Shown here: in pieces, positions 13,175-59,592 of the stretch
Numbering within the stretch: the first letter of the stretch is position 1
Layout of the letters: every line of letters starts with the position of its first letter
Virus record (IMG/VR): IMGVR_UViG_3300005965_000002
Location: 1-64,000 of that record
DNA: 64,000 bases
Reading direction: 5' to 3' (one strand)
The notes under the pieces: model-generated
Database searches by the model: none
Told to the model about the DNA's origin: nothing
The model's input: the letters and a program-made list of their open reading frames with translations, nothing else
Position numbers and translations under genes: made by a program

Positions 13175-13268
13175 AAGTCCACAGTGTCTACCATTCCACC
13201 ACCCGAGCATGTCAAAGATCATCTCATATGAATATACTCCTTTGATTATTCTAATTAAAGTAAAAAAG

Positions 13269-13352
13269 TGCGGAGAAAGGGACTCGAACCCTTAATCTCA
13301 TTTAGAGAATTAGCTCCTCGGGCTAACGTGTATACCATTCCACCATCTCCGC
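13269..13352 (-). tRNA. tRNA-Leu(GAG), with C33
   Basis: TTAGC-CCGAGGA-GCTAA; no CCA. Confidence 0.88.
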
Positions 13353-13393
13353 AATTATCTTTTGATATCCTTTTGTAGAAAAAGGAGATATGT

Positions 13394-13825
13394 ATGATAA
13401 TCAAAAAACTGGAAAAATATGCTTCTATCTTAGAAGATAGAGGTATGAAAAAGCAGGCTTTTGAAATAGATTTAATTTGCAATAGCATAGAAAAAGCAGC
13501 TTTTAAGTTTCCATGGACTAAGAAAAAAGAGCAAGACAAAGCTGAACTTGAGCAACTTATAGGTGACCGGGTAAAGAGCGATAATAAGTTTCTGGCTAAT
13601 AAGATTGAGATCTATGATCGTCAAAAAAACTTTTCTTCTGAGGGCCGCGTAAGGACCAAAAACCCTCCTAAAGAATTTAAGAACAAGTTTGTTGAGGGTC
13701 CAGATGGGTATTGGTACCTTCAGGATGATAGAGCGATGAGCGTACAGAAGTTTCCAGATAAAATGGTTCTATACGATGACTCTAAAGACCTTGGCGTACC
13801 GGTCCAAGGGTTAGAGATAATGTAA
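13394..13825 (+). CDS. hypothetical protein carrying the recurring LExKGxxKxAxxxD motif
   Basis: RBS AAGGAG; N-terminal motif shared with ORFs 24393, 27907 and 57509. Confidence 0.7.
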   Translation: MIIKKLEKYASILEDRGMKKQAFEIDLICNSIEKAAFKFPWTKKKEQDKAELEQLIGDRVKSDNKFLANKIEIYDRQKNFSSEGRVRTKNPPKEFKNKFVEGPDGYWYLQDDRAMSVQKFPDKMVLYDDSKDLGVPVQGLEIM

Positions 13826-13931
13826 AGACCGACCTCAGCTTCATAGGTTTAGCGTTGTTTCGCCTGCCACGCCTCAGCAGAGGGCCCGGGGTTCTGCGGG
13901 CCCAGGCGCACTTCCTGGTTTCTGGTCTTTA
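13823..13931 (-). ncRNA. putative structured small RNA within the tRNA array
   Basis: GC-rich island closed by TAAAGACC/GGTCTTTA; internal GGGCCC hairpin whose loop GCAGA matches downstream TCTGC. Confidence 0.55.
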
Positions 13932-13940
13932 ATGTAAAAA

Positions 13941-14025
13941 TGGGAGCACTAGGACTCGAACCTAGGAAGGCCGCTACAGCCGCCGGAGCTACAATCCGGT
14001 GCATTCGCCGCTATGCTATACTCCC
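13941..14025 (-). tRNA. tRNA-Tyr(GTA)
   Basis: CCGGA-TTGTAGC-TCCGG, long variable arm; no CCA. Confidence 0.9.
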
Positions 14026-14041
14026 TTAATCGGTAGTTAAA

Positions 14042-14124
14042 TGCTGACGGAGAGACTCGAACTCTCATGAGCATAAGCCCACCAGGTCCTGAACCTGGCG
14101 TGTCTACCATTCCACCACATCAGC
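14042..14124 (-). tRNA. tRNA-Leu(CAG)
   Basis: CCAGG-TTCAGGA-CCTGG; no CCA. Confidence 0.92.
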
Positions 14125-14130
14125 GAAAAA

Positions 14131-14204
14131 TGGAGACGGGATCGGGATTCGAACCCGAGATGGGAGTTTTGCAGACTCCTGCCTTACCGCTTGGCTATCC
14201 CGTC
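14131..14204 (-). tRNA. tRNA-Cys(GCA)
   Basis: GGAGT-CTGCAAA-ACTCC; U73; CCA. Confidence 0.93.
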
Positions 14205-14290
14205 TTAAAAGGAAGACTCTATGAAACAGAGTCTTCCCTCTATATAAAAAGGACAATTTCCTAACTAATGTGCCTATCAATGCGTCAAAA

Positions 14291-14302
14291 TGTCAAAGAG
14301 CA
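14291..14302 (-). promoter_or_regulatory. boxA-like antitermination element TGCTCTTTGACA
   Basis: One mismatch to rrn boxA TGCTCTTTAACA; lies upstream of a hairpin+T4 (14207-14237) and the tRNA block. Confidence 0.7.
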
Positions 14303-14308
14303 ATCTAA

Positions 14309-14458
14309 CTATCGAGTTTTGATGATCTTCACTCGATCTATTCTTTTTCTAACTTCTTCTTCAGGCATCATAGCTACCATACGCCGAGCTTGAGCCTTGC
14401 TTACACAAATTCTTTTTTCAATCAATCCGTCAATGAGTTCGTTTTTCTTATCTTCCAT
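14309..14458 (-). CDS. 49-aa protein with S4-like motif (not in ORF track)
   Basis: RBS AGGAGG; MEDKKNELIDGLIEKRICVSKAQARRMV... Confidence 0.55.
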   Translation of the reverse strand: MEDKKNELIDGLIEKRICVSKAQARRMVAMMPEEEVRKRIDRVKIIKTR

Positions 14459-14474
14459 ATCTCCTCCTAAACGC

Positions 14475-14715
14475 AAAAAACCCCTCCCAGGTTTGCTGGA
14501 AGGGGTTTTTCTAACTATCGGTATCTTTTGCTTATTTCGTTAGAAGTTCCTCCCAGCTACTATTGTATTCGCACAGAGATATGAATACAATAAGGTCCAT
14601 GCGGCTGATGTCAGCACGGTATGCAAGGACTGTAGTGTGGAGGATGTCGATTTCATTTCTTTTTTCCCTTAAACAAGTTCATTCCTAATATACCTTTTTT
14701 TCGCTGGATATTCAA
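14475..14715 (-). promoter_or_regulatory. attenuator 1: promoter TTGAAT-N17-TATATT, leader ORF 14656-14540, antiterminator, terminator 14510-14475
   Basis: Leader MKSTSSTLQSLHTVLTSAAWTLLYSYLCANTIVAGRNF; GCTGGGAG..TTCTAAC pairs with GTTAGAA..CTTCCAGC of the terminator 5' arm. Confidence 0.85.
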
Positions 14716-14926
14716 AGAATTTTTTCCAGCTTTTCTTTTTGGTATGGAACCGAATAGATTCGCTTCCTTCAAATTATATTCTTCTCTAATCTTAATCAGC
14801 ATCTCTTCAGGGATAGAATCCGGGACACATAGACTTAGTAAGTCTATGAAATTAAAGGTAGTACGCAACTGCTCTCTTGAGGTACATCCCTTTATCATCC
14901 TAATACATTTCGAGTAGACGGCGTCT

Positions 14927-15334
14927 TTATTTAATGACGCCTTTGGCTCGGTCTCTTTCACACGTATCGCAGGTACAAGCCGGGGCATGAGCTTTTCCCT
15001 CCGTTTGATAGTTCACTCCGCAATCCTTCAGAAGCTCTTTAAGTTGAGAATCTGTGTGGTCATACCAGTTATCGCGGATAAATAGTTTTTCTTTTTTATT
15101 AAACAGCTTTCCTTCAGTTTCCTTATAGACAGTCATCTTGCATGAGCGGCCATTCACATAATCCAGGCTGAGCTTTATGGACGGGTCTTTTTTGTGTACA
15201 CTAATTAGACCTTTTGCCTGCTCGTCAGTAAGGGGGTCAGGGGTGAATTGTAGAAAACCCATTCCCAGAGGCCGTGATAGTTCATACACCTTCTTAACAA
15301 ACTTTACCAAGTCTATGCCGGTAACTTCAATCAT
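14927..15334 (-). CDS. hypothetical phage protein
   Basis: ORF track; PLGMGFLQ...DYVNGR motif; RBS AGGAG. Confidence 0.65.
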   Translation of the reverse strand: MIEVTGIDLVKFVKKVYELSRPLGMGFLQFTPDPLTDEQAKGLISVHKKDPSIKLSLDYVNGRSCKMTVYKETEGKLFNKKEKLFIRDNWYDHTDSQLKELLKDCGVNYQTEGKAHAPACTCDTCERDRAKGVIK

Positions 15335-15343
15335 CAGTAGCTC

Positions 15344-15961
15344 CTATTGCTTATGCTTTAAAGTAAAATTGATTGTGTCATTCAGTACTGATCTATCAAG
15401 GATCATAAATCTTCCGAAACCTGTTTTACTGATTGTAGAAGAAAAACTTATTCTATCGTTAAGAGAAAATCTATTTAGTTGACCAAGCCAGTAGTCCAAC
15501 ATTTTTTGCATAGGTTTACTGTGCGTTTTTCTTATGATCACAGAGCTATCTATCATGAGGTATTGATCGCTTGCGCTAAGAAAAAGTTCTTTTTGTTCCT
15601 TTAAAACTTCCTGGGAGGATTCTGGGCTATGTTTAATTAGGTAATCTATTTTTTCAATAAAGGATTCTTCGTCACTACTGCTAAAGAAAAGAGCATCTAA
15701 ATCAGGATCAAGAGTTACTTTTTCAATTAGACTCTTTAAATGTTCAAAATTAGTAATATGTCGATTCCCGTCCAAGTAGACATTTATTTTGTATTCATTT
15801 AAGCAAAAATGAGGTTGCAGTTTGTAGTATTTGTTACTGTAAAGACCACTATTCTCTGCACTGAACTTAGGGAAGACTTTTACGTTCCAACCCGGAGCAT
15901 AAATATTAGGGGAATCCGTGATCAGAACAAAATCAAAGCCTGAATTACTAAAACGGCTCAC
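15344..15961 (-). CDS. DUF616-like glycosyltransferase-fold protein
   Basis: LITD, KYYKLQPH, VYLDGN, DRISF; an upstream VIYTAIFGDYD segment suggests an earlier start. Confidence 0.6.
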   Translation of the reverse strand: MSRFSNSGFDFVLITDSPNIYAPGWNVKVFPKFSAENSGLYSNKYYKLQPHFCLNEYKINVYLDGNRHITNFEHLKSLIEKVTLDPDLDALFFSSSDEESFIEKIDYLIKHSPESSQEVLKEQKELFLSASDQYLMIDSSVIIRKTHSKPMQKMLDYWLGQLNRFSLNDRISFSSTISKTGFGRFMILDRSVLNDTINFTLKHKQ

Positions 15962-16276
15962 ATTCTGAGGCGCGTCATAATCCCCAAATATAGCAGTATA
16001 GATAACAGTGCGAATAGTTCAATATACTTTTTTGAAAAGGTTATTTAAATCTAAATTTCCACCAGGGGTCACATCCCTTCCCATAAAACCGATAATCAGA
16101 AATATTCCAGGAGCAGTAGTACTTTTTATACCCTCCCCCATCCGGAACAGATTCTGATCTTCTTATCTTCCGGTTTGCCTGGTTTTTGTAGTACGCCCTG
16201 GATTTACCTTCGCTGGTTATCCAGAGGTTTTTGCGGTAAGAACGAGACATGTAAAACTCCTTGAAAAAGTTGAGTC

Positions 16277-18927: not shown

Positions 18928-19717
18928 CCTTATAATCGAATTTGATAGAATGTAATAAGCTTGAATAATTTCGATTGAATGGTTTGGGTGTAGTTGTTTG
19001 AGTTATTTGGCCCCAGGTAGCAGGCTCGACAAATCTACGTCTTATTTTATAGCCGTCATAAGCTCTGTAATGGGGCAGCATCAATTCATTTATTTCTTTT
19101 TCCCCTACGAGGTTTTTTAGGTTTCTTTTCTTCTTCATTATTATCTGTTTTCTTAAAGCTGTTAATGTATCTTTTTTTCATTTCCTCAGTTTCATAGTAA
19201 GGACACTTACAAGAATCCGGTTCTATGACTTTTAAAACTGTCGGTATAATGATATCACATTTACCATTTTCTTGATTTAAACAGCTTTTTAAATTGCATT
19301 CATTCGTCTTTTTCTTGGTTATCTTCTCGCTCTTTTTGCCAGACAATTTTTACATCCCTCTCTAAATTGTATATCCTGTCATCTAATAATTCCCGGAAGC
19401 TTACGCCCATTGGTACCTTTCCAAGGGATTTTATTGAAAGATAATAGGTACCGCCCATCTGGACATTAGTCTTACGAAGAAGCTGCCCTTCAATGTAGTC
19501 CAACCTCCGAGTATCGTTGATAGAGATGGCTTGTTCCGGTTTTTGATTCCATTGAGTCCTGCAATTTGGCTCATTACACTGGCAGGTTAACCGTGTGCCG
19601 TCATTACTGAAATAGGCATTGATTTTAGCGCTCTTACAGTTAGGGCAGCAGGGCAATAGTAATCGGTTGCTGTACATAATAATCCTTTAATATAGTTCTA
19701 TTAAGAGAGGTATATCT

Positions 19718-20053
19718 ATGTCTAAAGATATTTCTGATAAAGTATCCCAGCGCATACAAGCTGGAGACCGTGGCGAATTTGTTAAATTACGCTATTCCTG
19801 CGATTATGGGCACGGTTTTTTGGGGTTGTTTGCTGCTCTCTTTAAAGGTAATATCGAGGAAGTCATTGATGACCCAGGCCCTCCTTACGTTGATAAAGCT
19901 CATATGCCTATGATTGTCAGGAACCTCTATTTCCTTTATAATGAGGGCAACGGAAATGAGCACCTAAAAGATATCCCCAAAAAATACCACAAATACATAT
20001 GTGATATTTCGGAACTTAACAAGCCTTCCTCAGACTGCCTCTTTGAGTCCTGA
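19718..20053 (+). CDS. hypothetical protein
   Basis: RBS GAGG; preceded by the TAATAATCCTTTAAT motif. Confidence 0.6.
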   Translation: MSKDISDKVSQRIQAGDRGEFVKLRYSCDYGHGFLGLFAALFKGNIEEVIDDPGPPYVDKAHMPMIVRNLYFLYNEGNGNEHLKDIPKKYHKYICDISELNKPSSDCLFES

Positions 20054-20387
20054 TAGAATATACTAATTAAAATAACTATTTTAAATCACTTTTTATCGAG
20101 CATATCTAGCTTGTATAAAAGTCCTGCTGTTTTGTGATCCACCAGATGTCCGTGGAAGGTATTTGCTGAGGATCCAGGAGGGGTGTAAGGAGCATACCAT
20201 TTGGTCTTTTTCTCAACCTCTGATAGCTCCCGGGGCTCGTCGTAGGCTCCGATTTCAGTAGCATTACAGTGCTCACAGTGGTAGGGCCCACACTGTACGT
20301 ACCCTACTTCTACATCAACCCAATCTGCTTCGCATTCTGCTCCACAGTACGGGCATTTTTTCTTCGGCCTCTCGTACGCCGATCTCA

Positions 20388-24081: not shown

Positions 24082-24304
24082 AAAAAGAGAAACCCCGCTG
24101 AACTTTCGCTCGGCGGGGTTTCTCTTGAATTCACTTTTATAAAAAGTTATCTTCGAGACCCCCGCCCGGGCATAATATCATCGCCACTATCAAAATCGAT
24201 AGCGCTCATGCTGATGATAAAAATGCTGGTTACGATAGTCATTGAAGATAAACTCCTATTCATTGGTTCGTTTCTAATATACCCTTTTGTTACAAGGAAT
24301 TCAA
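24082..24304 (-). promoter_or_regulatory. attenuator 2: promoter TTGAAT-N17-TATATT, leader ORF 24242-24147, antiterminator, terminator 24126-24082
   Basis: Leader MTIVTSIFIISMSAIDFDSGDDIMPGRGSRR (RBS AGGAG); GGCGGGGGTCTC pairs with GAGAAACCCCGCC. Confidence 0.85.
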
Positions 24305-24392: not shown

Positions 24393-26543
24393 ATGGATTG
24401 GGTAGGATTAAGTTTATTTGGATATAGAGAAGCTGCAAGAAAATTTAAAAAACCTGCAGATCTTCAGTCTATACTAAAGACCATCAATATCACCTCAGAA
24501 CAATTTGAAGAGATTCGAAAAGAGGTGGCTCAAAAAGATACAGCCGGGTTAAAAGTAACTGCTCAGACTTCTGGGGCTATTGAATTATATGATCCGATCA
24601 TCACCTACCTTACTTGGATAGTACTACACGACAAGTTTAAATCTAAAAAAGAAAAGCCTGAATATCCTACTCACCAAGAATATGATTTCTTTCATGATTT
24701 ATTAGTTGCTGGTAAATTTGATGATATAAGAAAAATCATATCTAATGATAATGTTCCTCGTAACCAGCTACAGCAATATATACAGAAATTTCAGTCTTCC
24801 AATAAGTCAGATAATAAGCTCACCAAAGAAGATTTGAAAGTTTTAAATAATAAAAAAGAAGTAGTTGATTTAGGGGGAGGGTGGTCTTGGATAACCCTAG
24901 TAGATGATCAAGGCAACATAAAAGGTGGTTCTACGGTACTTACTAAAATACTAGGTCACTGTGGTAACGGTGAAGGTTTACCTGGAGATAAAATGTATCT
25001 ATTAAGTAATAAAACCATGGGACTTATACCTACTATCAAAGCTACAGTTATTGTTGATGGTGAAGGAAAAATCAGGGAGTCTAAGGCTTCTTTCAATAGA
25101 AAGATAAACATTAATAAATATGGGGGTGCCTTCTTAAAACTTCTTGAGCAACCTTTCGTAAAAGGCCTAGACGATAGTGGTGCTTACATGGCTGATTCAA
25201 ATCTCCATATGAGTGACTTTTCTGGTACTCCTTTTGAAGAACAAGCCAAGGCTCTTATAGAGAAAAAACCTAATCTTATGAATAATGATTTTGATCAAGT
25301 TATTACTAAATATAAAGATGAAGTATCAAGTCTCTCCCCAGAAGATAAAAAAGACGAATTACGGAAATTATTAGAAGATGGTCATATAAATTTAGTACAA
25401 GCTCGCGCCTTGAATGGCGGAAAATTTCCCTTTACAGACGACGAGTTGGTCGGTATGATTGATGGGGGATTAGATATAGGAAAGATAATTTCTGCCGGTA
25501 ATAGCTTATTTAGCCTTAAAGTGCAGCAAGCTTTAGCAAAAAAAGATCCTTCAAAAAACATCTCTTACATGCTTTACATGGCAGCTACTTTAAATAACAG
25601 TCCTATAGATAAAAAAATTCTTATAGAGGGTCTTAATTCCGCAAAAAAATTTAAAATGAATAGCTTTGCAGGTGATGTAGGAGATGAGACAAAAAATAAA
25701 TTAACTTCTTACTTGAAAAAGAATACTGATTTATTGTCCGCTTATCTTAAGAAAGATCCCTCGGCTATAGATTATTTCCCTGAAGACCAGCGAATGCATA
25801 TATTTAATAAAATGCCCGAGGCGTTCGCCGAAGTGTTTAAAAAAGTTCCTTCGGCTATACGTTATTTCCCTGAAGATAAAAGGATGGATATCTTTAACCA
25901 AATGCCCGAGGCGTTCGCCGAAGGGTTTTATGAAGACCCCTCGTCTATTGGTTATTTCCCTGAAGATAAAAGGATGGATATCTTTAACCGAATGCCCGAG
26001 GTGTTCGCCGAAGGGTTTAAAGAAGTTCCTTGGTCTATAAGTTATTTCCCTGAAGATAAAAAGATGGATATCTTTAACCGAATGCCCGAGGCGTTCGCCG
26101 AAGGGTTTAAAAAAATTCCTTCGGCTATAGGTTATTTCCCTGAAGACCAACACGGTTATATAAAGGAAACTATAAGAAAAATAAATGAGAAGAATAGAAC
26201 AAAGGAAGCGGCTACTATGAACAAGATATCTACCCTGTTAGACACAATAGCCAACCGATTGGAAGCAAAAGGCCTAATTAAGGAAGCTTTCAGCTTAGAT
26301 ACAATAGCAAATACTCTTGAAAAATGTGCTGCTATAGATCCATATGCGGCTACCTTGATAGCCCATGCAAAAGGTAATATGAATCAAATTCAGCAAGCTG
26401 CTCAAGATGTTAAGCAACTAGGGAAGAAAGGTATAGAATCGGTAGGCCCTGTAGAAGAAGTATTAGAAAAGCATAACTTAACTTTAAAGTCCAAGGATGA
26501 GGCTGCTTTAGAAAATCTTTGTGCTAATCTTTTAAAGATCTAA
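24393..26543 (+). CDS. large hypothetical protein with 30-aa tandem repeats and the shared motif near the C-terminus
   Basis: 716-aa ORF; preceded by TAATAATCTTATAAT. Confidence 0.75.
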   Translation: MDWVGLSLFGYREAARKFKKPADLQSILKTINITSEQFEEIRKEVAQKDTAGLKVTAQTSGAIELYDPIITYLTWIVLHDKFKSKKEKPEYPTHQEYDFFHDLLVAGKFDDIRKIISNDNVPRNQLQQYIQKFQSSNKSDNKLTKEDLKVLNNKKEVVDLGGGWSWITLVDDQGNIKGGSTVLTKILGHCGNGEGLPGDKMYLLSNKTMGLIPTIKATVIVDGEGKIRESKASFNRKININKYGGAFLKLLEQPFVKGLDDSGAYMADSNLHMSDFSGTPFEEQAKALIEKKPNLMNNDFDQVITKYKDEVSSLSPEDKKDELRKLLEDGHINLVQARALNGGKFPFTDDELVGMIDGGLDIGKIISAGNSLFSLKVQQALAKKDPSKNISYMLYMAATLNNSPIDKKILIEGLNSAKKFKMNSFAGDVGDETKNKLTSYLKKNTDLLSAYLKKDPSAIDYFPEDQRMHIFNKMPEAFAEVFKKVPSAIRYFPEDKRMDIFNQMPEAFAEGFYEDPSSIGYFPEDKRMDIFNRMPEVFAEGFKEVPWSISYFPEDKKMDIFNRMPEAFAEGFKKIPSAIGYFPEDQHGYIKETIRKINEKNRTKEAATMNKISTLLDTIANRLEAKGLIKEAFSLDTIANTLEKCAAIDPYAATLIAHAKGNMNQIQQAAQDVKQLGKKGIESVGPVEEVLEKHNLTLKSKDEAALENLCANLLKI
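25758..26150 (+). repeat. 90-nt (30-aa) tandem repeat, 4 full copies plus 1 partial
   Basis: TATTTCCCTGAAGA recurs at 25773, 25863, 25953, 26043 and 26133. Confidence 0.95.
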
Positions 26544-35844: not shown

Positions 35845-36852
35845 TTAACCCTTAGTGCTTTCTGAACAGAAACTAACTAATACTCTTTTGTTTTTTACTA
35901 TGATTCTGAAATACGGGCATTTTCCATTTATCGACAAATCTTTTCCATCATTACCTTTTCTAAATTTAACAATCTCAAATTGGTCAGGATTGAATTTGTG
36001 TAGGAACGTTATGGGGACACCCATATATCCATTATAATCGATTGGTATATCCTGTGTTTTATTGACATTTATCCCATCATAATTATCATACTTTGGATAT
36101 TCAGCTTCATTACCAAGATATTTCCTTTTTAGTTCAATGTCTTCATGACGTTTAAAAGTGTCCAAATTAGTTAGCCATAGACAATTATTTGGCGAAACTA
36201 TTCTATTTCCAGCATCATCTATGCGTGCTTCTGTTCCATAGAGATCATAGTGGTCAGGTACAATAAAACCAGAAACGCCTCTACCAAGACCTATTCCTAG
36301 CCAAGCATTGTTTTCCTTAATTAACTTAAAAATTTCCTTATACGTTATGGCATTAACATTCCCAATTATCAAAAATTGTTTATCATAGTTTACCAATTGA
36401 GCGACATACTCTCTGAATAGCGAAAAAGGAGGATTAGTAACAATAATATCTGATTGTTTCAAGAGTTCAATGCTTTCAGCACTTCTAAAGTCTCCATCTC
36501 CTTTGAAATAAACTATATCCGTTGTATCTGGTATCTTTTTCTCGCCCTCAGTTCCTGTATATGCATAGAAAAAACCATTTTCATCTTCTTGCGTATTAAA
36601 TAAATCTCTTGTTTGTTCCTTATAACATGACGCGATTACTTTTTTAAGGCCAAGTTCCTCAAAGTTTGAAGTAAAATAACGGAAGAAGTTGCTGATACGA
36701 GGGTCATCACAATTACAATAAACAACTTTATTCTTAAAATGACTCTTATAATGTTGTAATTCACTTTCTATATCCGCAAGCTGGGTGTAAAATTCATCAC
36801 TTTTCGATTTTTTTGCCTTTTGAAGTAATTTATTTGTTGCATTTCGTGCCAT
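35845..36852 (-). CDS. EcoRI-family adenine DNA methyltransferase
   Basis: AKKSKSDEFYT, VYCNCDDP, GDGDFRS.E, VTNPPFSLFREY, GVPITF. Confidence 0.9.
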   Translation of the reverse strand: MARNATNKLLQKAKKSKSDEFYTQLADIESELQHYKSHFKNKVVYCNCDDPRISNFFRYFTSNFEELGLKKVIASCYKEQTRDLFNTQEDENGFFYAYTGTEGEKKIPDTTDIVYFKGDGDFRSAESIELLKQSDIIVTNPPFSLFREYVAQLVNYDKQFLIIGNVNAITYKEIFKLIKENNAWLGIGLGRGVSGFIVPDHYDLYGTEARIDDAGNRIVSPNNCLWLTNLDTFKRHEDIELKRKYLGNEAEYPKYDNYDGINVNKTQDIPIDYNGYMGVPITFLHKFNPDQFEIVKFRKGNDGKDLSINGKCPYFRIIVKNKRVLVSFCSESTKG

Positions 36853-36861
36853 TAATTCACC

Positions 36862-37488
36862 TTAGTTGTTATTTGTTAATTGATTGAATATGTCGCTTCC
36901 CAATACTTTGAGCGAGGTCTTCGAAATTTCAATCATAACATCAAACATATCCTTAGTATCCCACCTTTCTCCGTTCCCCTGTGTATAAATAGATGTTGCT
37001 TGAAGCATAATTGTTTTATCAATATGCTTAACAAACTTATTCATACATAAATTGGTGTTGATGGGCATACCATAATTTGCTGATGTCAACCTATCTAGTC
37101 TATTTAGCATTCCTGAGTTATATTCAAGAGTTACAACTCTTCCGTCTGGCCTTTGAATTGAAATAGTTTCTGTTAAGAAATTTGAGCCTTCCAAAAACAG
37201 TACGTAAGGGAAATGAGATTCAGCTAGCATAAAGTTAGCTATTTCTGATATGTTTTTATGAGACCTTTCAATCGCATTTCCAGCGGCCATCAAGTCTTGG
37301 TTATTACCAGTGCCAACTAATTGACCATTTCTAATGTTTTCAATGTCTTTTCCCTGATGTTTGGCTTCTGAAACCAAAACTACTCTCCAATTGCCGTTGT
37401 CGTCTTTTACTTCAATAATTCCGCCATCAGGTTTAATACTAGAATTACCTAAATCTTTTCTCATTACTATGACTTGTTTGTAATTCAT
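36862..37488 (-). CDS. N-truncated EcoRI-like restriction endonuclease fused to a Pth2-like N-terminus
   Basis: KPDGG..EAKHQG..MAAGNAIERSHKN closely match EcoRI; first 14 aa MNYKQVIVMRKDLG are Pth2-like. Confidence 0.85.
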   Translation of the reverse strand: MNYKQVIVMRKDLGNSSIKPDGGIIEVKDDNGNWRVVLVSEAKHQGKDIENIRNGQLVGTGNNQDLMAAGNAIERSHKNISEIANFMLAESHFPYVLFLEGSNFLTETISIQRPDGRVVTLEYNSGMLNRLDRLTSANYGMPINTNLCMNKFVKHIDKTIMLQATSIYTQGNGERWDTKDMFDVMIEISKTSLKVLGSDIFNQLTNNN

Positions 37489-41081: not shown

Positions 41082-41106
41082 ATGAAATGTACTACCACCA
41101 AATAGA

Positions 41107-41312
41107 TATCAAAGAACAAATAAAAAACCCCGGAGAACTCTTGGTTCGCCGGGGTTTTTGATTCTCTTATTGAGCTTTAATCTAGGCCAAAAGAATCCCT
41201 CCCAACGAACCTTCTGTTCGCGGTTGTTGTGGATTAGGATTATTCTGGTTCATGATAAACATAATTTTTCCTCGTCAGTACTAATATACCCTTTTGCAGT
41301 AAAAAATACAAA
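41107..41312 (-). promoter_or_regulatory. attenuator 3: promoter TTGTAT-N17-TATATT, leader ORF 41262-41182, terminator 41159-41122, boxA-like 41118-41107
   Basis: Leader MFIMNQNNPNPQQPRTEGSLGGILLA; GGTTCGTTGGG pairs with CCCGGCGAACC. Confidence 0.88.
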
Positions 41313-46051: not shown

Positions 46052-46843
46052 ATGAAAAATTGTTTATTGTGCGGAGACCTTATTCCAAATTGGATTAAAA
46101 TAGACGGGAAAAGGAAAAATATATCCAGTCGAAAATACTGTTTAAAATGTTCGCCTTATAAAAAACACAACACAAAAAAGTTACACTTAAATAGTAACTC
46201 CGAAAAATTTAAAAAATGTAAAAGCTGCGGTAAAAAACAATCTATTGATAAATTCAGAAAAAGAACAGATAGAGAAAATTTAAGGGTGCCTTATTGTAAA
46301 AAGTGCCAAAATAAAGAGATGCTGATTAGATATAAAAAAAGACACTATAAATTAAAACTCAAAGCTGTTAAATACCTGGGCGGGAAATGTCATGTTTGTG
46401 GTTATAGTAAAAACATACATGTTTTAGACTTTCACCATAAGAACCCAAAAATTAAAAAAGGAGAATTTATAAAATTTAAAAGCGAAGCACGCATTGAGAA
46501 AGAACTAGATAGGTGCGTGTTACTTTGCTCTAACTGCCATAGGGAGCTCCACTATAATGTAAAGAGTTCTAAAATAATTAAAAAAGACACAATAAGAATA
46601 AAAAAGCTGTTGCTTAGTCTAAAGCAAAAAGCTGTTACATACCTGGGAGGGAAATGTTCTGCCTGCGGCTATAAAAAATGTATAGCCGCGCTTGAGTTTC
46701 ACCATATTTCAAAGAGCAAAGAATTTAATATATCAAAGCCTAAATCAATAGTATTTGAAAAAATAAAAACCGAATTAGATAAGTGCTCCCTATTATGCTC
46801 TAACTGTCACAGGGAAACACATCATAATAGTTGCAAAAAATAG
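46052..46843 (+). CDS. free-standing endonuclease with two HNH domains
   Basis: Two copies of GGKC..CGY....L.FHH...C.LLCSNCHRE.H. Confidence 0.88.
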   Translation: MKNCLLCGDLIPNWIKIDGKRKNISSRKYCLKCSPYKKHNTKKLHLNSNSEKFKKCKSCGKKQSIDKFRKRTDRENLRVPYCKKCQNKEMLIRYKKRHYKLKLKAVKYLGGKCHVCGYSKNIHVLDFHHKNPKIKKGEFIKFKSEARIEKELDRCVLLCSNCHRELHYNVKSSKIIKKDTIRIKKLLLSLKQKAVTYLGGKCSACGYKKCIAALEFHHISKSKEFNISKPKSIVFEKIKTELDKCSLLCSNCHRETHHNSCKK

Positions 46844-47184: not shown

Positions 47185-47187
47185 GTA

Positions 47188-47353: not shown

Positions 47354-47443
47354 ATATCATCAAAGAACATGGGCTTGCCCAGAATATAACCGGAGGCTCA
47401 ATGCCAAAGAGGCATTTTAACCATCTGAGCTATAAAGGCATAC

Positions 47444-48429: not shown

Positions 48430-48637
48430 AAAAAAGCCCTCCGGATTCCTCCAGAGGGCTTTGTATCTTAAAAATGCTTTCGCTTTTAGATAAAAAGCCT
48501 AAATTCCCCCCTGTGGCTACCTTTACGGCGCTTTACTACGACTTTTACCTTTTTCACGATCATCAGCATAATTCCACCTAATTTCTTCAGTTTTCTTCTC
48601 GTACTTATAATATACCACTTAGAACTCCTTATTTCAA
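48430..48637 (-). promoter_or_regulatory. attenuator 4: promoter TTGAAA-N17-TATATT, leader ORF 48569-48486, terminator 48462-48430
   Basis: Leader MLMIVKKVKVVVKRRKGSHRGEFRLFI; GGCTTTTTATCT pairs with AGATACAAAGCC, and CAGGGGG with CCCTCTG. Confidence 0.88.
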
Positions 48638-52731: not shown

Positions 52732-52752
52732 ATTATCTTATTTATTAAAAAA

Positions 52753-54543: not shown

Positions 54544-54593
54544 TCTAATCTCCGGTTTATACCTAAATACTATTTTGAAAAAGTTATTTAAAA

Positions 54594-55482: not shown

Positions 55483-55496
55483 AATTACTCCTTTAA

Positions 55497-55568
55497 AGCC
55501 GGTGAAGGGACTCGGACCCCCAACCTACGCATTACGGGTGCGTTGCTCTACCGTTGAGCTACACCGGC
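55497..55568 (-). tRNA. tRNA-Thr(CGT), with C33
   Basis: ACGCA-CCCGTAA-TGCGT; no CCA. Confidence 0.85.
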
Positions 55569-56269
55569 TAGTATCCTAATTCAGATGCTGCTTGAACAAT
55601 TGGATCTGGCATCTTGATCTGCGTATAGGATGTCTTATTTTTATATACCTGGAGTTTCTCTATTTTCTCCCCCACAAAATCAGAGATTCTTTTTAATTCG
55701 TGATCCTGGTTTTCTATAAAATCTTCCATTTTTACCACTATCGATCTTTCTGGGTAAGGAACAGATTTTATAATGTCGTATTGAAGCTTCCAGCTCCATA
55801 AGCTTATATTTGCGTTTTTTAATCCACCAAACGCTCCAAAATGATTTAACAGCTTATCGCTATAGTGAGGGGCATTTCTCATTGGATTGCGAAACCAGAG
55901 TACATAGTAAAACTCAGGATATAGCCTAGTAAGCCAGGGATAGATAAAAGTTGTTTCTGGAAGCTTCCACCCTTTTTTTGGAGATTTATCGAGTAGAATG
56001 TCATGCAGATACCGGCGAATATCCTCGGCATCTTTAGCAGTGCAGCCTTCTATTGCTGGTTGTAGATTATAGTGATTGCCATCAAATTTAATTTGACTGA
56101 TAAACCTTTTGGCAATATCATACATTAAAGCATAGGGTTCCTTATCATAGCTTACATTCCTAAACTGAGGGGAACCCATAAAAAATCCGCTACTAGAAAA
56201 AGTTTTTGCTATTAATCTAGAAGCAGAAGATCCACGACCAATGATTGTTACAATCTTAGGACTCATCAC
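55568..56269 (-). CDS. sulfotransferase-family protein
   Basis: IIGRGSSASR, GWKLPET, FRNP, VKMEDF. Confidence 0.7.
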   Translation of the reverse strand: MMSPKIVTIIGRGSSASRLIAKTFSSSGFFMGSPQFRNVSYDKEPYALMYDIAKRFISQIKFDGNHYNLQPAIEGCTAKDAEDIRRYLHDILLDKSPKKGWKLPETTFIYPWLTRLYPEFYYVLWFRNPMRNAPHYSDKLLNHFGAFGGLKNANISLWSWKLQYDIIKSVPYPERSIVVKMEDFIENQDHELKRISDFVGEKIEKLQVYKNKTSYTQIKMPDPIVQAASELGY

Positions 56270-56489
56270 CTTCCTCTACTTCGTTACAGGCTATGCTTGC
56301 GTTTGCCCACATGATCGCTTCGCGTAGCTTTTCTATCGCTTTGTTAGTTTCCTCGCCTTCGGGGCAAAGCTTGACAATCTTTTTCGCTAGTCTTTTTCCT
56401 GCAGTCCTGAGAGTTTCATAACGATCGGGTTGGTCTCCACCCGGTCTGTGGTAGCTAAAAATGTTTTCGATTTGGTCTTTTGTAATCAT
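56256..56489 (-). CDS. Acb2/Tad1-like small helical protein
   Basis: FSYH.P..Q..RY..LR...CP...AIEKLREAIMWANASIA; start at ATG 56489. Confidence 0.65.
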   Translation of the reverse strand: MITKDQIENIFSYHRPGGDQPDRYETLRTAGKRLAKKIVKLCPEGEETNKAIEKLREAIMWANASIACNEVEEGDES

Positions 56490-56509
56490 CTTATCTTCTC
56501 CATAAAAAT

Positions 56510-56584
56510 TGGAGCAGGAGACGAGACTCGAACTCGCAACAATCACCTTGGAAGGGTGGGGCTCTACCATTGAGCTACTCCTGC
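56510..56584 (-). tRNA. tRNA-Gly(TCC)
   Basis: Loop CTTCCAA; U73; CCA. Confidence 0.92.
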
Positions 56585-57508
56585 ATATATTTAAATGTTT
56601 TTGGTTTTCTCTATATTTTCACTAATAAATTGCCTGACTTTTTTCCTAGATTTTTTCTTTTCCTTTATTTTCTACAAACTCTTCGCCTCTTTCCCAGGCT
56701 GCTATCTTAGCGTCTGCCTCTGATTCATGCATAATTATAAGAGACCCGTCCTTGCAGTCGAAACCAACAGGACCTGAAATAGAAACTTCTTTGAAATCGT
56801 AAATCACCAGATATTGCTTAGAATCCTCTGTTATCAATATCGCTGGTGTCTCGTCTAATCTTAACTTTCCTTTATAGCCTTTTTCCAGTAAATGACCAAC
56901 GGCTTTAGAAAGTATCTTCAGTTTTTTTGGAGAGGCTAGTCCCTCATAACTGAGGCGCAGAAACTCCTTAAAATTTTCCTTCGTTAGTAGTCCTGACTCA
57001 AGAGCTTCAAAAATAGCATCCGATGCATTTTCTACTGTGAGCTCAGGATCCAAATCCGGGCTATCCTCAAAGTTTATCATTCTCAGCTCAACTCTTTAAA
57101 CAAACTTATATAATTGTCTGCGATTTCCCTGTCTGACTTCTTCTCTTCTTCGCTGAGATTTTCATACTCGGAAAGCATTTGCCTTACCCAGCGGGCGACC
57201 TTTTCCTCGGGGATCAAAATAGCACCAAAAGAAGTAGGCTCACATTGCTTAAAAAGGTACTTCATTTAGTGAGACCATACATCATGGCAGTGCCTAGCGA
57301 TCTCTTCCTTAGGATCCTTATCTTTTTTAGAAAAAGGATTAATTTTCTCAGGGTTTACTGGTAATTCCCCAGCTTCGGCATTTTCTCTAATCTGGCGTAA
57401 GCTCCAGGGTTCGCTGTCTCTCATAATATGTTTTACCAATATTTTGATATTAAAGAATTATTTCACTGATTAACTACTAATATTCTGCAATTTAAAAAGG
57501 AGTATCCT

Positions 57509-57922
57509 ATGCATAGAATATCAGAATATTTAGACTCTCTTTCTAATATATTAGAGAGCAAAGGATTTTTAAAGCAGGCTGAGCATATTGATATGCTTAC
57601 TAACACAGTAGATGGGTTATGGCTCTGCTCATGCTGTCAGAAGCCCACGGTAAATAGTATAGAAGATCGTTACATGGTAAACGATGATATATGGAGAGAG
57701 CTGGGTTTCCCGGGCCAAGTAGATGGCATTCCTGATGACTACTTTTTATGTTGGAGCTGTCTTATTATGGCAGTTTCGAAAAAGTTAGGTAGAGGGCTTT
57801 CATCTGCCGATTTTGCTCAATATATGCAGTACCCTATAAACGTAAATAATCCGAATATAATTGATCTTATGAGGGGAGAAATGGACCAGGTAGGACTCGA
57901 ACCTACGACTGCTCGATTATGA
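57509..57922 (+). CDS. hypothetical protein with the shared N-terminal motif
   Basis: RBS AAGGAG; LDSLSNILESKGFLKQAEHIDML. Confidence 0.7.
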   Translation: MHRISEYLDSLSNILESKGFLKQAEHIDMLTNTVDGLWLCSCCQKPTVNSIEDRYMVNDDIWRELGFPGQVDGIPDDYFLCWSCLIMAVSKKLGRGLSSADFAQYMQYPINVNNPNIIDLMRGEMDQVGLEPTTARL

Positions 57923-57955
57923 GTCGAGAACTCTAACCAACTGAGTTACTGGTCC
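57882..57955 (-). tRNA. tRNA with CAT anticodon (Ile2 likely, Met possible)
   Basis: CTCGA-CTCATAA-TCGAG; no CCA; its leader contains ATA twice. Confidence 0.88.
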
Positions 57956-58145
57956 TAAAAATTCTCAAAATTTTCTGCAAAGTGTATTCTTTCATTTTGA
58001 CGGCATTCTCCCAATCTTAAAGAGACTGATTTGCCAAATTCTTTTCTTTTCTTTTAATATAATAGCACTTGTCTGTGTCAGGGCAATATATGCACATTAC
58101 ATCTGTAGTACTCATTATAACCTCTTTGAGCTACTTGATAAATAG

Positions 58146-58270
58146 AGCCCCGGGTTGGATTCGAACCAACGATGGAGGTCTTCAGTCACCCAGCAAACAG
58201 CCTCTCAACTGGTCGCGAGTTCAATTTAACCACTGGGTATTGTCGCCGTGTGCCTTCTCGGCTCCAGGGC
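58146..58270 (-). ncRNA. 125-nt tRNA-like RNA (acceptor and T arm, long helix replacing anticodon arm)
   Basis: GCCCTGG/CCGGGGC-U; GTTGG-TTCGAAT-CCAAC; ACCCAGT/GCTGGGT helix. Confidence 0.65.
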
Positions 58271-58569
58271 ATTCTGTGTCTATTTTAACATACTTTTTAG
58301 TATCTTAGTTTTAAAACGTATCTTTTCTTTTACTAAGTTTTTTCAAGCACTTCTTTGCTGTTTTTTCGAGCTCTGTAATAACAAGAACACAATCGTTGAC
58401 TTCGCCCTCGTAATAAAAATGAACAAACCCACCCTCTTTGTCATCACTTAGTTTAGAGGCTATAAGTTTCATTTTATGGTCTAAATAGGTGTTTTCCATG
58501 TTTCTCCTTTCTCTTACCATAAAAATATAGTAAAAGATAAGGAGATAATTAATGAGGATTGTGTTAGAA

Positions 58570-58644
58570 TGGAGCAGGGGACGGGAGTCGAACCCGCAAC
58601 AACCACCTTGGCAAGGTGGAGCTCTACCGTTGAGCTACCCCTGC
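58570..58644 (-). tRNA. tRNA-Gly(GCC)
   Basis: CCACC-TTGCCAA-GGTGG; CCA. Confidence 0.93.
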
Positions 58645-58645
58645 T

Positions 58646-59104
58646 TTATCTGAGATTATAGAAGTAAAGTAGACCAGCCCACCCCGAGGGTAAACACCTA
58701 GGTGCTTCTTCTAACTCTTCTCCATATTTTACCGCCATTTCAAGGAAGTACTTAGCATGGAAAAAGGCCTCTACCATAGGTCTCGTGTGTTTAAGCCAAT
58801 TTTTGTTATGCTTGTCTTGGAAGGTTTTGCCTGAAGCACCTTCCTTAAGTATCTCTTCTAAAAAACAGTTAGGCTTTACTCCCTCAGGTGCTAAGCTGTT
58901 AAGCTTTTCAATAATCTCTTTGGTAATCCCTTGGATGTAATAAACCTTAAAAGATTGGTGGTAGAACCGGTATATATGGTCTTCATAAAACCAATGACCG
59001 TTTATCTTCTCTAACAGTTCTTTAAGCTCCTTGTGATTACGCTTTATATTTTCTAAAAGCGCGTTAGCTTGCTTATGCATGTTCTCAAAATAATTATGAT
59101 CCAT
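58646..59104 (-). CDS. conserved hypothetical protein
   Basis: YRFYHQSFKVY...EAFFHAKYFL...LPSGWA. Confidence 0.7.
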   Translation of the reverse strand: MDHNYFENMHKQANALLENIKRNHKELKELLEKINGHWFYEDHIYRFYHQSFKVYYIQGITKEIIEKLNSLAPEGVKPNCFLEEILKEGASGKTFQDKHNKNWLKHTRPMVEAFFHAKYFLEMAVKYGEELEEAPRCLPSGWAGLLYFYNLR

Positions 59105-59162
59105 AAAAACCCTCCTTCTTTAATATAACTATTTACAGAAAGGTTTTTTGAAAATAATAAAA

Positions 59163-59234
59163 TAGCCCGTACCGGAGTCGAACCGATGCGTCCTGGCTGA
59201 GAACCAGGTATCCTGACCACTAGATGAACGGGCC
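59163..59234 (-). tRNA. tRNA-Glu(CTC)
   Basis: CCTGG-TTCTCAG-CCAGG; no CCA. Confidence 0.9.
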
Positions 59235-59239
59235 ATTAA

Positions 59240-59313
59240 TAGAGGTAGGGGGATTCGAACCCCCGATCTACGCCGTGAAAGGGCGTTGAGTTTGACCACT
59301 ACTCTATACCTCC
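59240..59313 (-). tRNA. tRNA-Glu(TTC)
   Basis: ACGCC-CTTTCAC-GGCGT; no CCA. Confidence 0.9.
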
Positions 59314-59318
59314 ATATA

Positions 59319-59400
59319 TGGAGCTGGGAGAGGGTGTTTCACCCACACAGAGCTCATTCCCCTGAGCAAGGGGTCCGCTGCCTATTTCTGGAGTCCCAGC
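59319..59400 (-). ncRNA. 82-nt tRNA-like RNA ending UCCA
   Basis: GCTGGGA/TCCCAGC-TCCA; non-canonical T loop TGAAACA; CCCCT-TGCTC-AGGGG arm. Confidence 0.65.
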
Positions 59401-59592
59401 ATAGTAACTAATCTAAGGTGCGTTCTTATGCTTATTCCTGTCAAAGAGCTTCGGCTTCCACTGAGTGCAGTGATCTGCGCACCTAACGTAGATAGCCTGT
59501 TTTTTGGCCGTGCACACACGATAGCCCTGTCTTATGGATCTACACCCATTAGCACAGTTGTAACAGCTTTCGTCATGTATTTTAGTGGCCAT

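What the first reader, a model, noticed from the sequence alone, without database searches (positions are those of the whole stretch)
13210..59450. rrn-type boxA elements follow the attenuators
TGCTCTTTGACA (14302-14291), AGCTCTTTGACA (59450-59439), TGATCTTTGACA (13221-13210), TGTTCTTTGATA (41118-41107) and TGTTCTTTGATG (47369-47358) all lie on the minus strand just upstream of tRNAs. boxA recruits NusB/NusE for processive antitermination in rRNA operons and CRISPR arrays (established). Inference: a two-tier design in which attenuation decides and host Nus factors carry polymerase through many kb. I saw none after attenuator 2.
Basis: partly seen in the sequence, partly recalled or inferred. 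Interest (0 to 1): 0.68.

Follow-up and report, generated by a model that had tools for sequence, protein, structure and literature searches.

The report
Conserved boxA-like motif before phage tRNAs
A giant phage carries a short conserved sequence, identical in its key positions to the bacterial boxA signal that makes RNA polymerase resist termination, just after the attenuators that gate three of its five gated tRNA gene clusters, so it probably borrows the host's ribosomal-RNA antitermination machinery, though this is not proven.

Summary
The window is the first 64 kb of a 258.6-kb jumbo phage contig and holds at least 37 tRNA genes, all on the minus strand.

A whole-window count is not significant. 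In strictly intergenic DNA on the transcribed strand, GHTCTTTRA occurs 4 times against 0.48 expected, and never on the other strand.

Three sites (14302, 41118, 59450) lie downstream of promoter / leader-peptide / terminator attenuators. They are kept at the same place in diverged relatives: four genomes for 41118, three for 59450 and two for 14302. The flanks have diverged, and in one relative the overlapping small ORF is gone.

The invariant positions are those that NusB-NusE reads in boxA. A second conserved box, (G)CACAUU, lies 14-18 nt downstream. It equals the NusA-binding start of the lambda nutR spacer.

Each conserved site sits where translation ends and the untranslated tRNA stretch begins. 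I therefore favour a nut-like Nus-loading site (about 0.5). A weak secondary promoter is the main rival (about 0.2).

Sites 13221 and 47369 are not conserved. Attenuators 2 and 5 have no motif directly after them. Binding and antitermination are untested.

The parts
14291..14302 (-). Site 1, TGCTCTTTGACA. It begins 7 nt after the stop of a conserved 49-aa ORF that follows attenuator 1.
   Evidence: The orthologue AGCTCTTTGACA is at L025:1925-1936. The ORF is conserved at 74% aa identity.
14268..14273 (-). Second box GCACAT, 17 nt after site 1.
   Evidence: Identical in L025, where the gap is 18 nt.
14215..14250 (-). Hairpin followed by a short T run, directly before tRNA-Cys.
   Evidence: The stem is kept in L025 through G-U changes and one compensatory change.
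59439..59450 (-). Site 2, AGCTCTTTGACA, within the last 12 codons of a conserved 59-aa Cys-rich ORF (59592-59413) that follows attenuator 4.
   Evidence: Orthologues: L018:10761-10772 AGATCTTTGACA (inside the ORF) and L022:6321-6332 TGTTCTTTGACA (no ORF there).
59416..59421 (-). Second box GCACCT, 17 nt after site 2.
   Evidence: L018 has GCACCT at 17 nt and L022 has GCACAT at 15 nt.
59315..59393 (-). Conserved tRNA-like structure (7-bp acceptor stem, ends in CCA) between site 2 and tRNA-Glu.
   Evidence: cloverleaf-like consensus with 12 compensatory pairs over three genomes. ARAGORN does not call it, and Rfam gives no match at E up to 1.
41107..41118 (-). Site 4, TGTTCTTTGATA, 3 nt after the T-tract of the attenuator 3 terminator and 25 nt before tRNA-Asn.
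   Evidence: In the four-genome alignment A2 the T-tract plus motif is the longest invariant run, while the 3' flank has diverged. Orthologues: L015:4589-4600, L020:11906-11917, L016:13000-13011.
41087..41092 (-). Second box variant GTACAT, 14 nt after site 4.
   Evidence: L015 has GCACTT, L020 GCACTA and L016 GAACAT.
13210..13221 (-). Site 3, TGATCTTTGACA. It lies at about +4 to +15 of the transcript predicted from a strong internal promoter (-10 at 13236-13231) and 2 nt before the 5' exon of an intron-containing tRNA-Leu. No second box.
   Evidence: There is no orthologue in L025, where the tRNA-Leu arrangement differs.
47358..47369 (-). Site 5, TGTTCTTTGATG, 4 nt before tRNA-Lys(ctt). No second box and no orthologue found.
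   Evidence: The Lys/Arg/Val block of L020 has no motif.
41122..41311 (-). Attenuator 3: promoter TTGTAT-N17-TATATT, leader ORF 41262-41182 (MFIMNQNNPNPQQPRTEGSLGGILLA), terminator 41154-41122. Downstream tRNAs: Asn, Gln, Asn, Gln, Pro, Pro.
14475..14715 (-). Attenuator 1: promoter TTGAAT-N17-TATATT, leader ORF 14656-14540 (contains ...LLYSYLC...), terminator 14505-14475. Downstream tRNAs: Cys, Leu, Tyr, Leu, Leu.
59593..59784 (-). Attenuator 4: promoter TTGAAT-N17-TATATT, leader ORF 59725-59657 (MIATTTIRIEGREGEGEGTIMS), terminator 59626-59593. Downstream tRNAs: Glu, Glu, Gly, Met, Gly, Thr, Arg.
24082..24304 (-). Attenuator 2 (leader ORF 24242-24147, terminator 24124-24082; downstream tRNAs Phe, Asp, Asp, Ser). 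No boxA-like motif follows it.
   Evidence: The orthologue in L023 also lacks the motif.
48430..48637 (-). Attenuator 5 (leader ORF 48569-48486, MLMIVKKVKVVVKRRKG...; terminator 48459-48430; downstream tRNAs Lys, Lys, Arg, Val, Arg). No motif lies next to the terminator.
   Evidence: In the L020 orthologue tRNA-Lys starts directly after the terminator.

Best explanation
The three conserved sites (14302, 41118, 59450) are nut-like RNA elements. Each is a boxA, G-H-U-C-U-U-U-G-A-N-A, followed 14-18 nt later by (G)CACAUU.

Proposed mechanism:
1. A strong phage promoter starts transcription (inferred from sequence).
2. A leader-peptide attenuator lets polymerase through when ribosomes stall on the codons served by the tRNAs downstream. 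The structure is shown by covariation; the mechanism itself is inferred.
3. The boxA RNA emerges just past the terminator, or at the end of the short ORF that follows it. This is exactly where the transcript stops being translated.
4. Host NusB-S10 binds boxA, and NusA may bind the CACAUU box (inferred from sequence identity only).
5. The modified polymerase then resists Rho, and perhaps helps RNA folding, through the untranslated tRNA, tRNA-like and intron stretches (inferred).

Placing the site after the terminator keeps it from overriding the attenuation decision. Sites 13221 and 47369 may be extra lone boxA copies inside blocks, like the spacer boxA of rrn operons, but the evidence for them is weak.
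For: - Enrichment. GYTCTTTRA gives 5 matches in minus-strand untranslated DNA against 0.59 expected and 0 in 45 kb of minus-strand CDS. In strict intergenic DNA GHTCTTTRA gives 4 against 0.48, with 0 on the other strand.
- Conservation. Site 4 is kept in four genomes whose neighbouring PRPP synthetase is down to 56% identical. The T-tract plus motif is the longest invariant run of the regulatory region, and the 3' flank has diverged. Site 2 is kept in L018 and also in L022, where the overlapping ORF is absent. Site 1 is kept in L025.
- Pattern of invariance. G2, U4, C5, U6-8 and A10 never vary. Positions 3, 9 and 11 vary as they do between the E. coli and B. subtilis boxA. NusB-NusE reads an 8-nt boxA core, with G2, C5 and U6 critical and G9 or A9 tolerated.
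- Second box. CACAUU equals the first six bases of the lambda nutR spacer. NusA binds that spacer, and deleting those six bases abolishes antitermination.
- Position. The motif lies 3 nt after the T-tract (site 4), 7 nt after the stop of a conserved 49-aa ORF (site 1), and in the last 12 codons of a conserved 59-aa ORF (site 2).
- Not a main-class promoter. The PWM scores of all sites are strongly negative.
Against: - There are no binding, transcript or genetic data, and the host is unknown.
- The second box also resembles a degraded -10 (GTATATT becoming GCACATT) behind a perfect -35 (TTGACA). A promoter reading therefore explains both boxes too.
- In lambda the CACAUU spacer abuts boxA. Here it lies 14-18 nt away.
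- L016 has U at boxA position 9.
- Site 2 lies in a translated ORF in two genomes.
- A terminator-like hairpin sits between site 1 and tRNA-Cys.
- Two of the five attenuators have no adjacent motif.
- The untranslated stretches after sites 2 and 4 are only about 240-300 nt, so the need for anti-Rho protection is not obvious.
- Predicted RNA accessibility is unremarkable.
- No Nus-like or N/Q-like protein domain was found in the 50 window ORFs scanned against Pfam.
Confidence: 0.5

Rival explanations
1. The element is a weak secondary sigma-70-type promoter placed after the attenuator. TTGACA (or TTGAAA, TTGATA, TTTAAA) is the -35 and CAC[AC]TT a weak -10 that keeps A-11 and usually T-7. It gives the tRNA genes a basal expression that does not depend on attenuation.
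For: - Both boxes are conserved.
- The second box with its flanks, G-CACATT-AG, resembles the main promoters' G-TATATT-AG.
- Real promoters of this phage group carry TCTTTGAAT at -35: window 14720 and L015:4391.
- L022's main promoter is TTGACA-N17-TATATT.
- TTGACA is rarer in the window than base composition predicts: 23 observed against about 43 by my own estimate.
Against: - The gap between the two hexamers ranges from 15 to 19 nt over nine instances, and it differs between orthologues (18 in the window, 19 in L025).
- T-12 is lost in eight of the nine instances, and T-7 in two.
- For site 4 and its L015 orthologue the start site would fall inside tRNA-Asn.
- A -35 reading does not predict the invariant G and UC upstream of the hexamer, whereas the 3' half of the hexamer varies.
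- PWM scores run from -14 to -34, against +24 to +36 for real promoters.
- Sites 3 and 5 would have their -10 inside a tRNA.
Confidence: 0.2
2. The conserved element has another sequence-specific role. Examples are a binding site for a phage or host protein, a sigma-dependent pause or factor-loading site (Q-like), or an RNA-processing signal for the tRNA precursors.
For: - Conservation of two boxes with a flexible linker.
- The phage encodes its own sigma-70-family factor at 4855-5799.
- The second box lies a constant 15-16 nt before the tRNA-like element in three genomes.
Against: - No candidate binding protein or known processing signal has this sequence.
- The exact bipartite pattern occurs only twice in the 258-kb contig and in no other IMG/VR contig.
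- The match to boxA at precisely the NusB-NusE contact positions would then be a coincidence.
Confidence: 0.17
3. The motifs have no function. They are T-rich intergenic sequence next to terminator tails, picked out because they look like boxA.
For: - The whole-window count is not above chance.
- The motif carries little information.
- Sites 3 and 5 and the match at 46718 have no conserved counterpart.
- Site 4 continues a T-rich terminator tail.
Against: - Strand- and compartment-specific enrichment.
- Conservation at three loci across two to four diverged genomes while the flanks diverge, including a genome where the overlapping ORF is lost.
- 6 of 7 TCTTTGA matches in minus-strand untranslated DNA have G two bases upstream.
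Confidence: 0.08

Closest known systems
rrn-operon boxA (leader and spacer antitermination sites; NusB-S10, NusA, NusG, SuhB complex)
   Same: - The same 8-9-nt core, within the range spanned by the E. coli UGCUCUUUAACA and B. subtilis AUGAUCUUUGAAA consensus.
- It lies in the transcribed strand ahead of structured, untranslated RNA that includes tRNAs.
- Possible second copies occur inside the transcription unit, like the rrn spacer boxA.
   Different: - It is phage-borne and precedes tRNA arrays interspersed with small ORFs, not rRNA.
- It lies downstream of a leader-peptide attenuator.
- No boxB-like hairpin lies directly upstream, except that the attenuator terminator itself precedes site 4.
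- Position 9 is G, and U in one relative.
- Function is untested.
Lambda nutR / nutL (boxA - spacer - boxB)
   Same: - A phage element that uses host Nus factors.
- boxA plus a CACAUU sequence identical to the start of the nutR spacer that NusA binds.
   Different: - CACAUU lies 14-18 nt from boxA instead of adjacent to it.
- No boxB hairpin with an N-type loop was found, and no N-like protein among the 50 window ORFs scanned.
- The boxA is of the full rrn type (CUUUG), not the weakened lambda type (CUUA).
boxA upstream of CRISPR arrays and in the suhB 5' UTR (Wade laboratory work)
   Same: A lone boxA placed at the start of a long untranslated transcript, or a 5' UTR, outside rrn operons.
   Different: - Those are chromosomal, mostly in gamma-proteobacteria, and follow GYTCTTTAANA.
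- Here the element is in a phage, has G at position 9, and comes with a second conserved box.
trp/his/leu-type ribosome-mediated attenuators
   Same: The upstream units have a promoter, a short leader ORF rich in particular codons, a 1:2 helix over those codons, and a terminator. The terminator's 5' arm can pair with region 2 instead.
   Different: - They control tRNA genes, not amino-acid biosynthesis genes.
- The enriched codons are those read by the tRNAs downstream.
- They are followed by the boxA-like element.

Membership tests
boxA / Nus-factor antitermination site | Sequence matches the boxA core read by NusB-NusE (G2, C5, U6 critical; 8 nt). | tested here: met
   All 11 instances (5 in the window, 6 orthologues) have G2, U4, C5, U6-8 and A10. 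Positions 3, 9 and 11 vary within, or nearly within, the E. coli / B. subtilis / Aquifex range. L016 has U9, which is outside that range.
boxA / Nus-factor antitermination site | Lies on the transcribed strand, in RNA downstream of a promoter. | tested here: met
   All sites are on the strand of the tRNAs and genes, 4 to about 400 nt downstream of predicted promoters of the TTGAAT/TTTAAA-N17-GTATATT family. The promoters are predicted from sequence; there are no transcript data.
boxA / Nus-factor antitermination site | Precedes a long untranslated or structured transcript. | tested here: inconclusive
   Each conserved site marks the end of translation and the start of a tRNA stretch. That stretch is about 1.9 kb after site 1 but only about 240-300 nt after sites 2 and 4, before the next ORF.
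boxA / Nus-factor antitermination site | Conserved at the nucleotide level in relatives. | tested here: met
   Site 4 in 4 genomes, site 2 in 3 and site 1 in 2. Sites 3 and 5 are not conserved.
boxA / Nus-factor antitermination site | Binds NusB-S10 and confers Nus-dependent read-through of Rho-dependent terminators. | not testable with these tools
   No RNA-protein prediction or experiment is available, and the host is unknown.
Lambda-type nut site | boxA, NusA-binding spacer and a boxB hairpin bound by an N protein. | tested here: not met
   CACAUU is present but 14-18 nt away. No conserved boxB-type hairpin lies between the boxes, and no N-like domain was found in the 50 ORFs scanned.
Sigma-70-type promoter | -35 and -10 hexamers 16-18 nt apart, with T-12, A-11 and T-7. 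| tested here: not met
   The -35 is perfect at sites 1-3. The -10 lacks T-12, the spacer ranges from 15 to 19 nt, and PWM scores run from -14 to -34. A weak promoter is not excluded.
Ribosome-mediated (leader-peptide) attenuator (the units upstream) | Leader ORF with regulatory codons, alternative helices, and an intrinsic terminator. | tested here: met
   Five units were found. The terminator of unit 3 has 3 compensatory pairs over 4 genomes. The MFE fold pairs the N/Q/P codons with region 2. The true leader-to-tRNA pairing ranks 1 of 120 permutations. The L016 leader is rich in N, P and Q and is followed by tRNAs Asn, Pro, Gln, Pro.

The most novel reading that the evidence does not exclude
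The phage runs a demand-sensing tRNA supply circuit with two tiers.

Tier 1: leader peptides rich in the codons of the downstream tRNAs work as trp-style attenuators. A tRNA block is transcribed when ribosomes stall for lack of exactly those charged tRNAs.

Tier 2: a phage nut-like site (rrn-type boxA plus a NusA-type CACAUU box) sits at the first untranslated nucleotides after the checkpoint. It loads host Nus factors so that polymerase carries through the tRNA, tRNA-like and intron RNAs.

I found no report of attenuator-gated phage tRNA genes in the paper library searched, nor, to my knowledge, of boxA sites serving phage tRNA arrays.
Probability: 0.35. Interest if true: 0.85.

Novelty: new member of a known kind. 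Interest (0 to 1): 0.6.

Why it matters
- If the sites load Nus factors, rrn-type antitermination serves a phage's own translation-supply genes. That goes beyond the known cases of rRNA operons, lambdoid nut sites, CRISPR arrays and suhB.
- It would be placed with single-nucleotide logic behind a regulatory terminator.
- Together with the leader-peptide attenuators, it would show how a jumbo phage both decides when to make tRNAs and makes sure that whole multi-kb arrays are completed.
- It gives a compact, mutable 12-40-nt element for testing Nus recruitment in non-model hosts.

Tried and rejected
- **Whole-window enrichment of the consensus:** not significant. The degenerate pattern fitted to the five sites (6 against 0.2) is circular, so I did not use it as evidence.
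- **Main-class promoter reading:** rejected by PWM.
- **Sigma-54 reading of GGCAC:** rejected by eye, because the GG is present only at site 1.
- **Local duplication as the source of the site 1 / site 2 similarity:** the flanks do not align.
- **Exact bipartite pattern in IMG/VR:** found only as the two window copies.
- **Close relatives in other collections:** INPHARED phages, IMG/VR and JGI metagenomes gave only the same phage or relatives at 40-57% aa identity without tRNAs nearby. Relatives came only through the large protein collection. Three look-ups returned no DNA.
- **RNA accessibility of the motif:** uninformative.
- **Host identification:** only a weak hint. The nearest cellular PRPP synthetases, about 50% identical, are from Fibrobacter and Chitinispirillales. 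Strong Shine-Dalgarno use and TTGACA/TATATT promoters argue against a Bacteroidota host.
- **Site at 46718:** set aside, because it lies in a plus-strand HNH coding repeat.
- **ORF start at 13222 covering site 3:** judged an artefact. The HNH gene has its own ribosome-binding site and ATG at 13102, as in L025.
- **Papers not held in the library:** Arnvig 2008 and Stringer 2020.

Full report
**What the window is.** The window equals bases 1-64000 of IMGVR_UViG_3300005965_000002, a 258,580-bp phage contig. A second assembly of the same phage is 99.99% identical. ARAGORN finds 37 tRNA genes, all on the minus strand, including a CUA suppressor. Rfam adds two group I introns. Nearly all genes are on the minus strand. 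Identified genes include a sigma-70-family factor, topoisomerase I, a CCA-adding enzyme, PRPP synthetase, an intein-containing NAD synthase and an EcoRI restriction-modification pair. The nearest annotated phages are the huge uncultured phages LR756500-LR756503, at 33-38% aa identity.

Over the whole window the boxA consensus is not enriched: 8 matches against 5.7 expected at up to 2 mismatches. Location changes the picture:
- All five minus-strand matches to GYTCTTTRA lie in the 16.2 kb that is not translated on that strand. The expectation is 0.59, and 0 of 2000 dinucleotide shuffles reach 5.
- The 45 kb of minus-strand coding sequence has none.
- With a strict mask (9.9 kb, no gene on either strand, no tRNA, tRNA-like element or intron), GHTCTTTRA occurs 4 times against 0.48 expected (P = 0.0015) and never on the other strand.
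- 6 of 7 TCTTTGA matches in minus-strand untranslated DNA have G two bases upstream. The exception is a genuine promoter -35.

**Real promoters and attenuators.** Repeat families in the window turned out to be about 17 minus-strand promoters of the form TTGAAT or TTTAAA, N17, G-TATATT.

Five of them head a unit made of a promoter, a ribosome-binding site, a leader ORF of 22-38 codons and a strong intrinsic terminator, followed by tRNAs. Each leader peptide is rich in the amino acids of the tRNAs that follow:
- MFIMNQNNPNPQQP... precedes Asn, Gln, Asn, Gln, Pro, Pro.
- MIATTTIRIEGREGEGEGTIMS precedes Glu, Glu, Gly, Met, Gly, Thr, Arg.
- ...LLYSYLC... precedes Cys, Leu, Tyr, Leu, Leu.
- ...AIDFDSGDD... 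precedes Phe, Asp, Asp, Ser.
- MLMIVKKVKVVVKRRKG... precedes Lys, Lys, Arg, Val, Arg.

The true leader-to-block pairing ranks first of 120 permutations. For the Asn/Gln unit, the terminator helix has three compensatory pairs across four genomes. The minimum-energy fold pairs the regulatory codons with a region that can instead pair with the terminator's 5' arm. A distant relative whose leader is rich in N, P and Q is followed by tRNAs Asn, Pro, Gln, Pro.

**Where the motifs sit.**
- Site 4 (41118) starts 3 nt after the T-tract of the attenuator 3 terminator.
- Site 1 (14302) starts 7 nt after the stop of a 49-aa ORF that follows the attenuator 1 terminator. The ORF is 74% identical in a relative.
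- Site 2 (59450) lies in the last 12 codons of a 59-aa Cys-rich ORF that follows the attenuator 4 terminator. That ORF is 54% identical, with the same length, in a relative.
- In all three, the motif marks the point where the transcript stops being translated and the tRNA stretch begins.
- Site 3 (13221) lies at about +4 of a transcript from a strong internal promoter, 2 nt before the 5' exon of an intron-containing tRNA-Leu.
- Site 5 (47369) lies 4 nt before tRNA-Lys.
- Attenuators 2 and 5 have no motif next to them.

**Relatives.** IMG/VR, INPHARED and the JGI metagenome scan gave nothing useful. Relatives came through neighbouring proteins in the large protein collection and their contigs.

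*Site 4.* L015, L020 and L016 keep the promoter, leader, terminator and T-tract, followed by A-TTT(T)-GTTCTTT-[G/T]-A-[A/C/T]-A. Their PRPP synthetases are 76%, 55% and 56% identical to the window's. In the four-way alignment this is the longest invariant run, longer than the -10 box. The roughly 30 nt between it and tRNA-Asn have diverged.

*Site 2.* L018 has AGATCTTTGACA inside the conserved ORF. L022 is a more distant relative (neighbouring protein 51% identical). It has no ORF there but keeps TGTTCTTTGACA. The constraint is therefore on the nucleotides, not on the protein.

*Site 1.* L025 has AGCTCTTTGACA 5 nt after the stop of the orthologous ORF.

*No orthologue or no motif.* No orthologue was found for sites 3 and 5. 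Attenuators 2 and 5 lack the motif in relatives too.

**Which positions are constrained.** Over 11 instances, G2, U4, C5, U6-U8 and A10 never vary. Position 3 is C, U or A. Position 9 is G, and U once. Position 11 is C, A or U.

This is the pattern expected for boxA:
- NusB-NusE recognises an 8-nt boxA core, with G2, C5 and U6 critical and G or A tolerated at position 9 (PMC3177189).
- The E. coli consensus is UGCUCUUUAACA, and the B. subtilis rrn consensus, shown to bind NusB, is AUGAUCUUUGAAA (PMC13753749).
- The gamma-proteobacterial search consensus is GYTCTTTAANA (PMC5725501).

A -35 hexamer would predict the opposite pattern: a conserved TTGACA and free upstream bases.

**A second box.** At sites 1, 2 and 4 and all their orthologues, a second box lies 14-18 nt after the motif. 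It reads GCACAT, GCACCT, GCACTT or GCACTA, with GTACAT at window site 4 and GAACAT in L016.

It has two readings:
1. *A -10 remnant.* With its flanks it looks like a mutated version of the phage's own -10 (G-TATATT-AG against G-CACATT-AG), behind a perfect -35. That suggests a weak secondary promoter.
2. *A NusA site.* (G)CACAUU equals the first six bases of the lambda nutR spacer CACAUUCCA. NusA binds that spacer, and deleting those six bases abolishes antitermination (PMC2724277).

Against the promoter reading:
- The gap between hexamers ranges from 15 to 19 nt and differs between orthologues.
- T-12 is lost in eight of the nine instances.
- The predicted start site would fall inside tRNA-Asn for site 4.
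- The main-promoter PWM gives -14 to -34, against +24 to +36 for real promoters.

Against the nut reading: the box is not adjacent to boxA as it is in lambda.

**Verdict.** The motif is a real, conserved, strand-specific element at three of the five attenuator-gated tRNA blocks. Its sequence, its pattern of constraint and its position at the first untranslated nucleotides after the regulatory checkpoint fit a Nus-loading boxA best (about 0.5). A weak internal promoter is the main rival (about 0.2). Another sequence-specific role (about 0.17) and chance (about 0.08) remain possible.

Sites 3 and 5 are individually weak. Given 0.15-0.5 expected matches in strict intergenic DNA, one of them could be chance.

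Nothing here shows Nus binding or antitermination. Predicted RNA accessibility was uninformative. No Nus-, N- or Q-like domain was found in the 50 ORFs scanned.

A paper search found no report of leader-peptide attenuation of phage tRNA genes. I made no search for boxA in phage tRNA arrays and know of no report.

Noticed in passing
window 14715-14475, 24304-24082, 41311-41122, 48637-48430, 59784-59593 (minus strand): Five leader-peptide attenuators control tRNA blocks. Each leader is rich in the amino acids of the tRNAs downstream. The true pairing ranks 1 of 120 permutations, the terminator shows covariation, and the leader composition co-varies with the tRNA set in relative L016. This looks like trp-style attenuation applied to tRNA genes. 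A paper search found no report of it.
   Followed up: partly
window 59393-59315; L018:10822-10897; L022:~6370-6450: A 79-nt tRNA-like RNA with a 7-bp acceptor stem, a long anticodon-type arm, a T-like arm and a 3' CCA. It is conserved, with 12 compensatory pairs over three genomes. Neither ARAGORN nor Rfam recognises it, even at E up to 1.
   Followed up: partly
window 13208-12350 and about 3750-2944 (minus strand): Two tRNA genes are interrupted by group I introns (Rfam hits at 12677-12433 and 3239-2944). The first is a tRNA-Leu whose intron carries an HNH homing endonuclease ORF (13102-12536). ARAGORN misses both split genes.
   Followed up: partly
window ~47440-47372, ~46039-45954, ~58215-58140, ~4640-4568 (minus strand): Further tRNA-like pieces with canonical T-arm and acceptor 3' ends that ARAGORN does not call (repeat families D2, D3). 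The one at 46039-45954 gives only a partial Rfam tRNA match (21 bits) and follows its own promoter.
   Followed up: partly
window 31086-31041 (minus strand): The CUA suppressor tRNA (called tRNA-Pyl by ARAGORN) has its own promoter, with the -10 ending 11 nt before the tRNA and no attenuator. Relatives L016, L020 and L021 also carry a CUA suppressor, which hints at TAG recoding somewhere in these genomes.
   Followed up: no
window 35845-37488 (minus strand): A complete EcoRI-type restriction-modification pair (methylase 35845-36852, endonuclease 36862-37488; Pfam E-values 2e-132 and 4e-116) lies inside the phage tRNA region.
   Followed up: no
window 61976-63991 (minus strand): The NAD synthase gene carries an intein with a LAGLIDADG domain. 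Relatives L018 and L022 have the gene without the insert, judging from their lengths.
   Followed up: no
window 24393-26543 (plus strand), repeats 25663-26202: A 716-aa plus-strand ORF with no Pfam match contains five tandem 90-nt (30-aa) repeats. It is one of the few genes that run against the main transcription direction.
   Followed up: no
window 24098-24040 (minus strand); L023:1262-1316: A second mini-ORF with its own ribosome-binding site (MMGDSDFSGFKI) lies between the attenuator 2 terminator and tRNA-Phe. It is again rich in Asp and Phe codons, and it is conserved in L023.
   Followed up: no
L020:3796-4974 and 19323-20342; L016:18224-19480; contig of P0123: Relatives carry IS605-type OrfB/TnpB (Cas12f-like) genes beside their tRNA blocks. 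HNH genes sit at equivalent places in the window (47977-47444, 46052-46843), so mobile elements seem to reshuffle these arrays.
   Followed up: no
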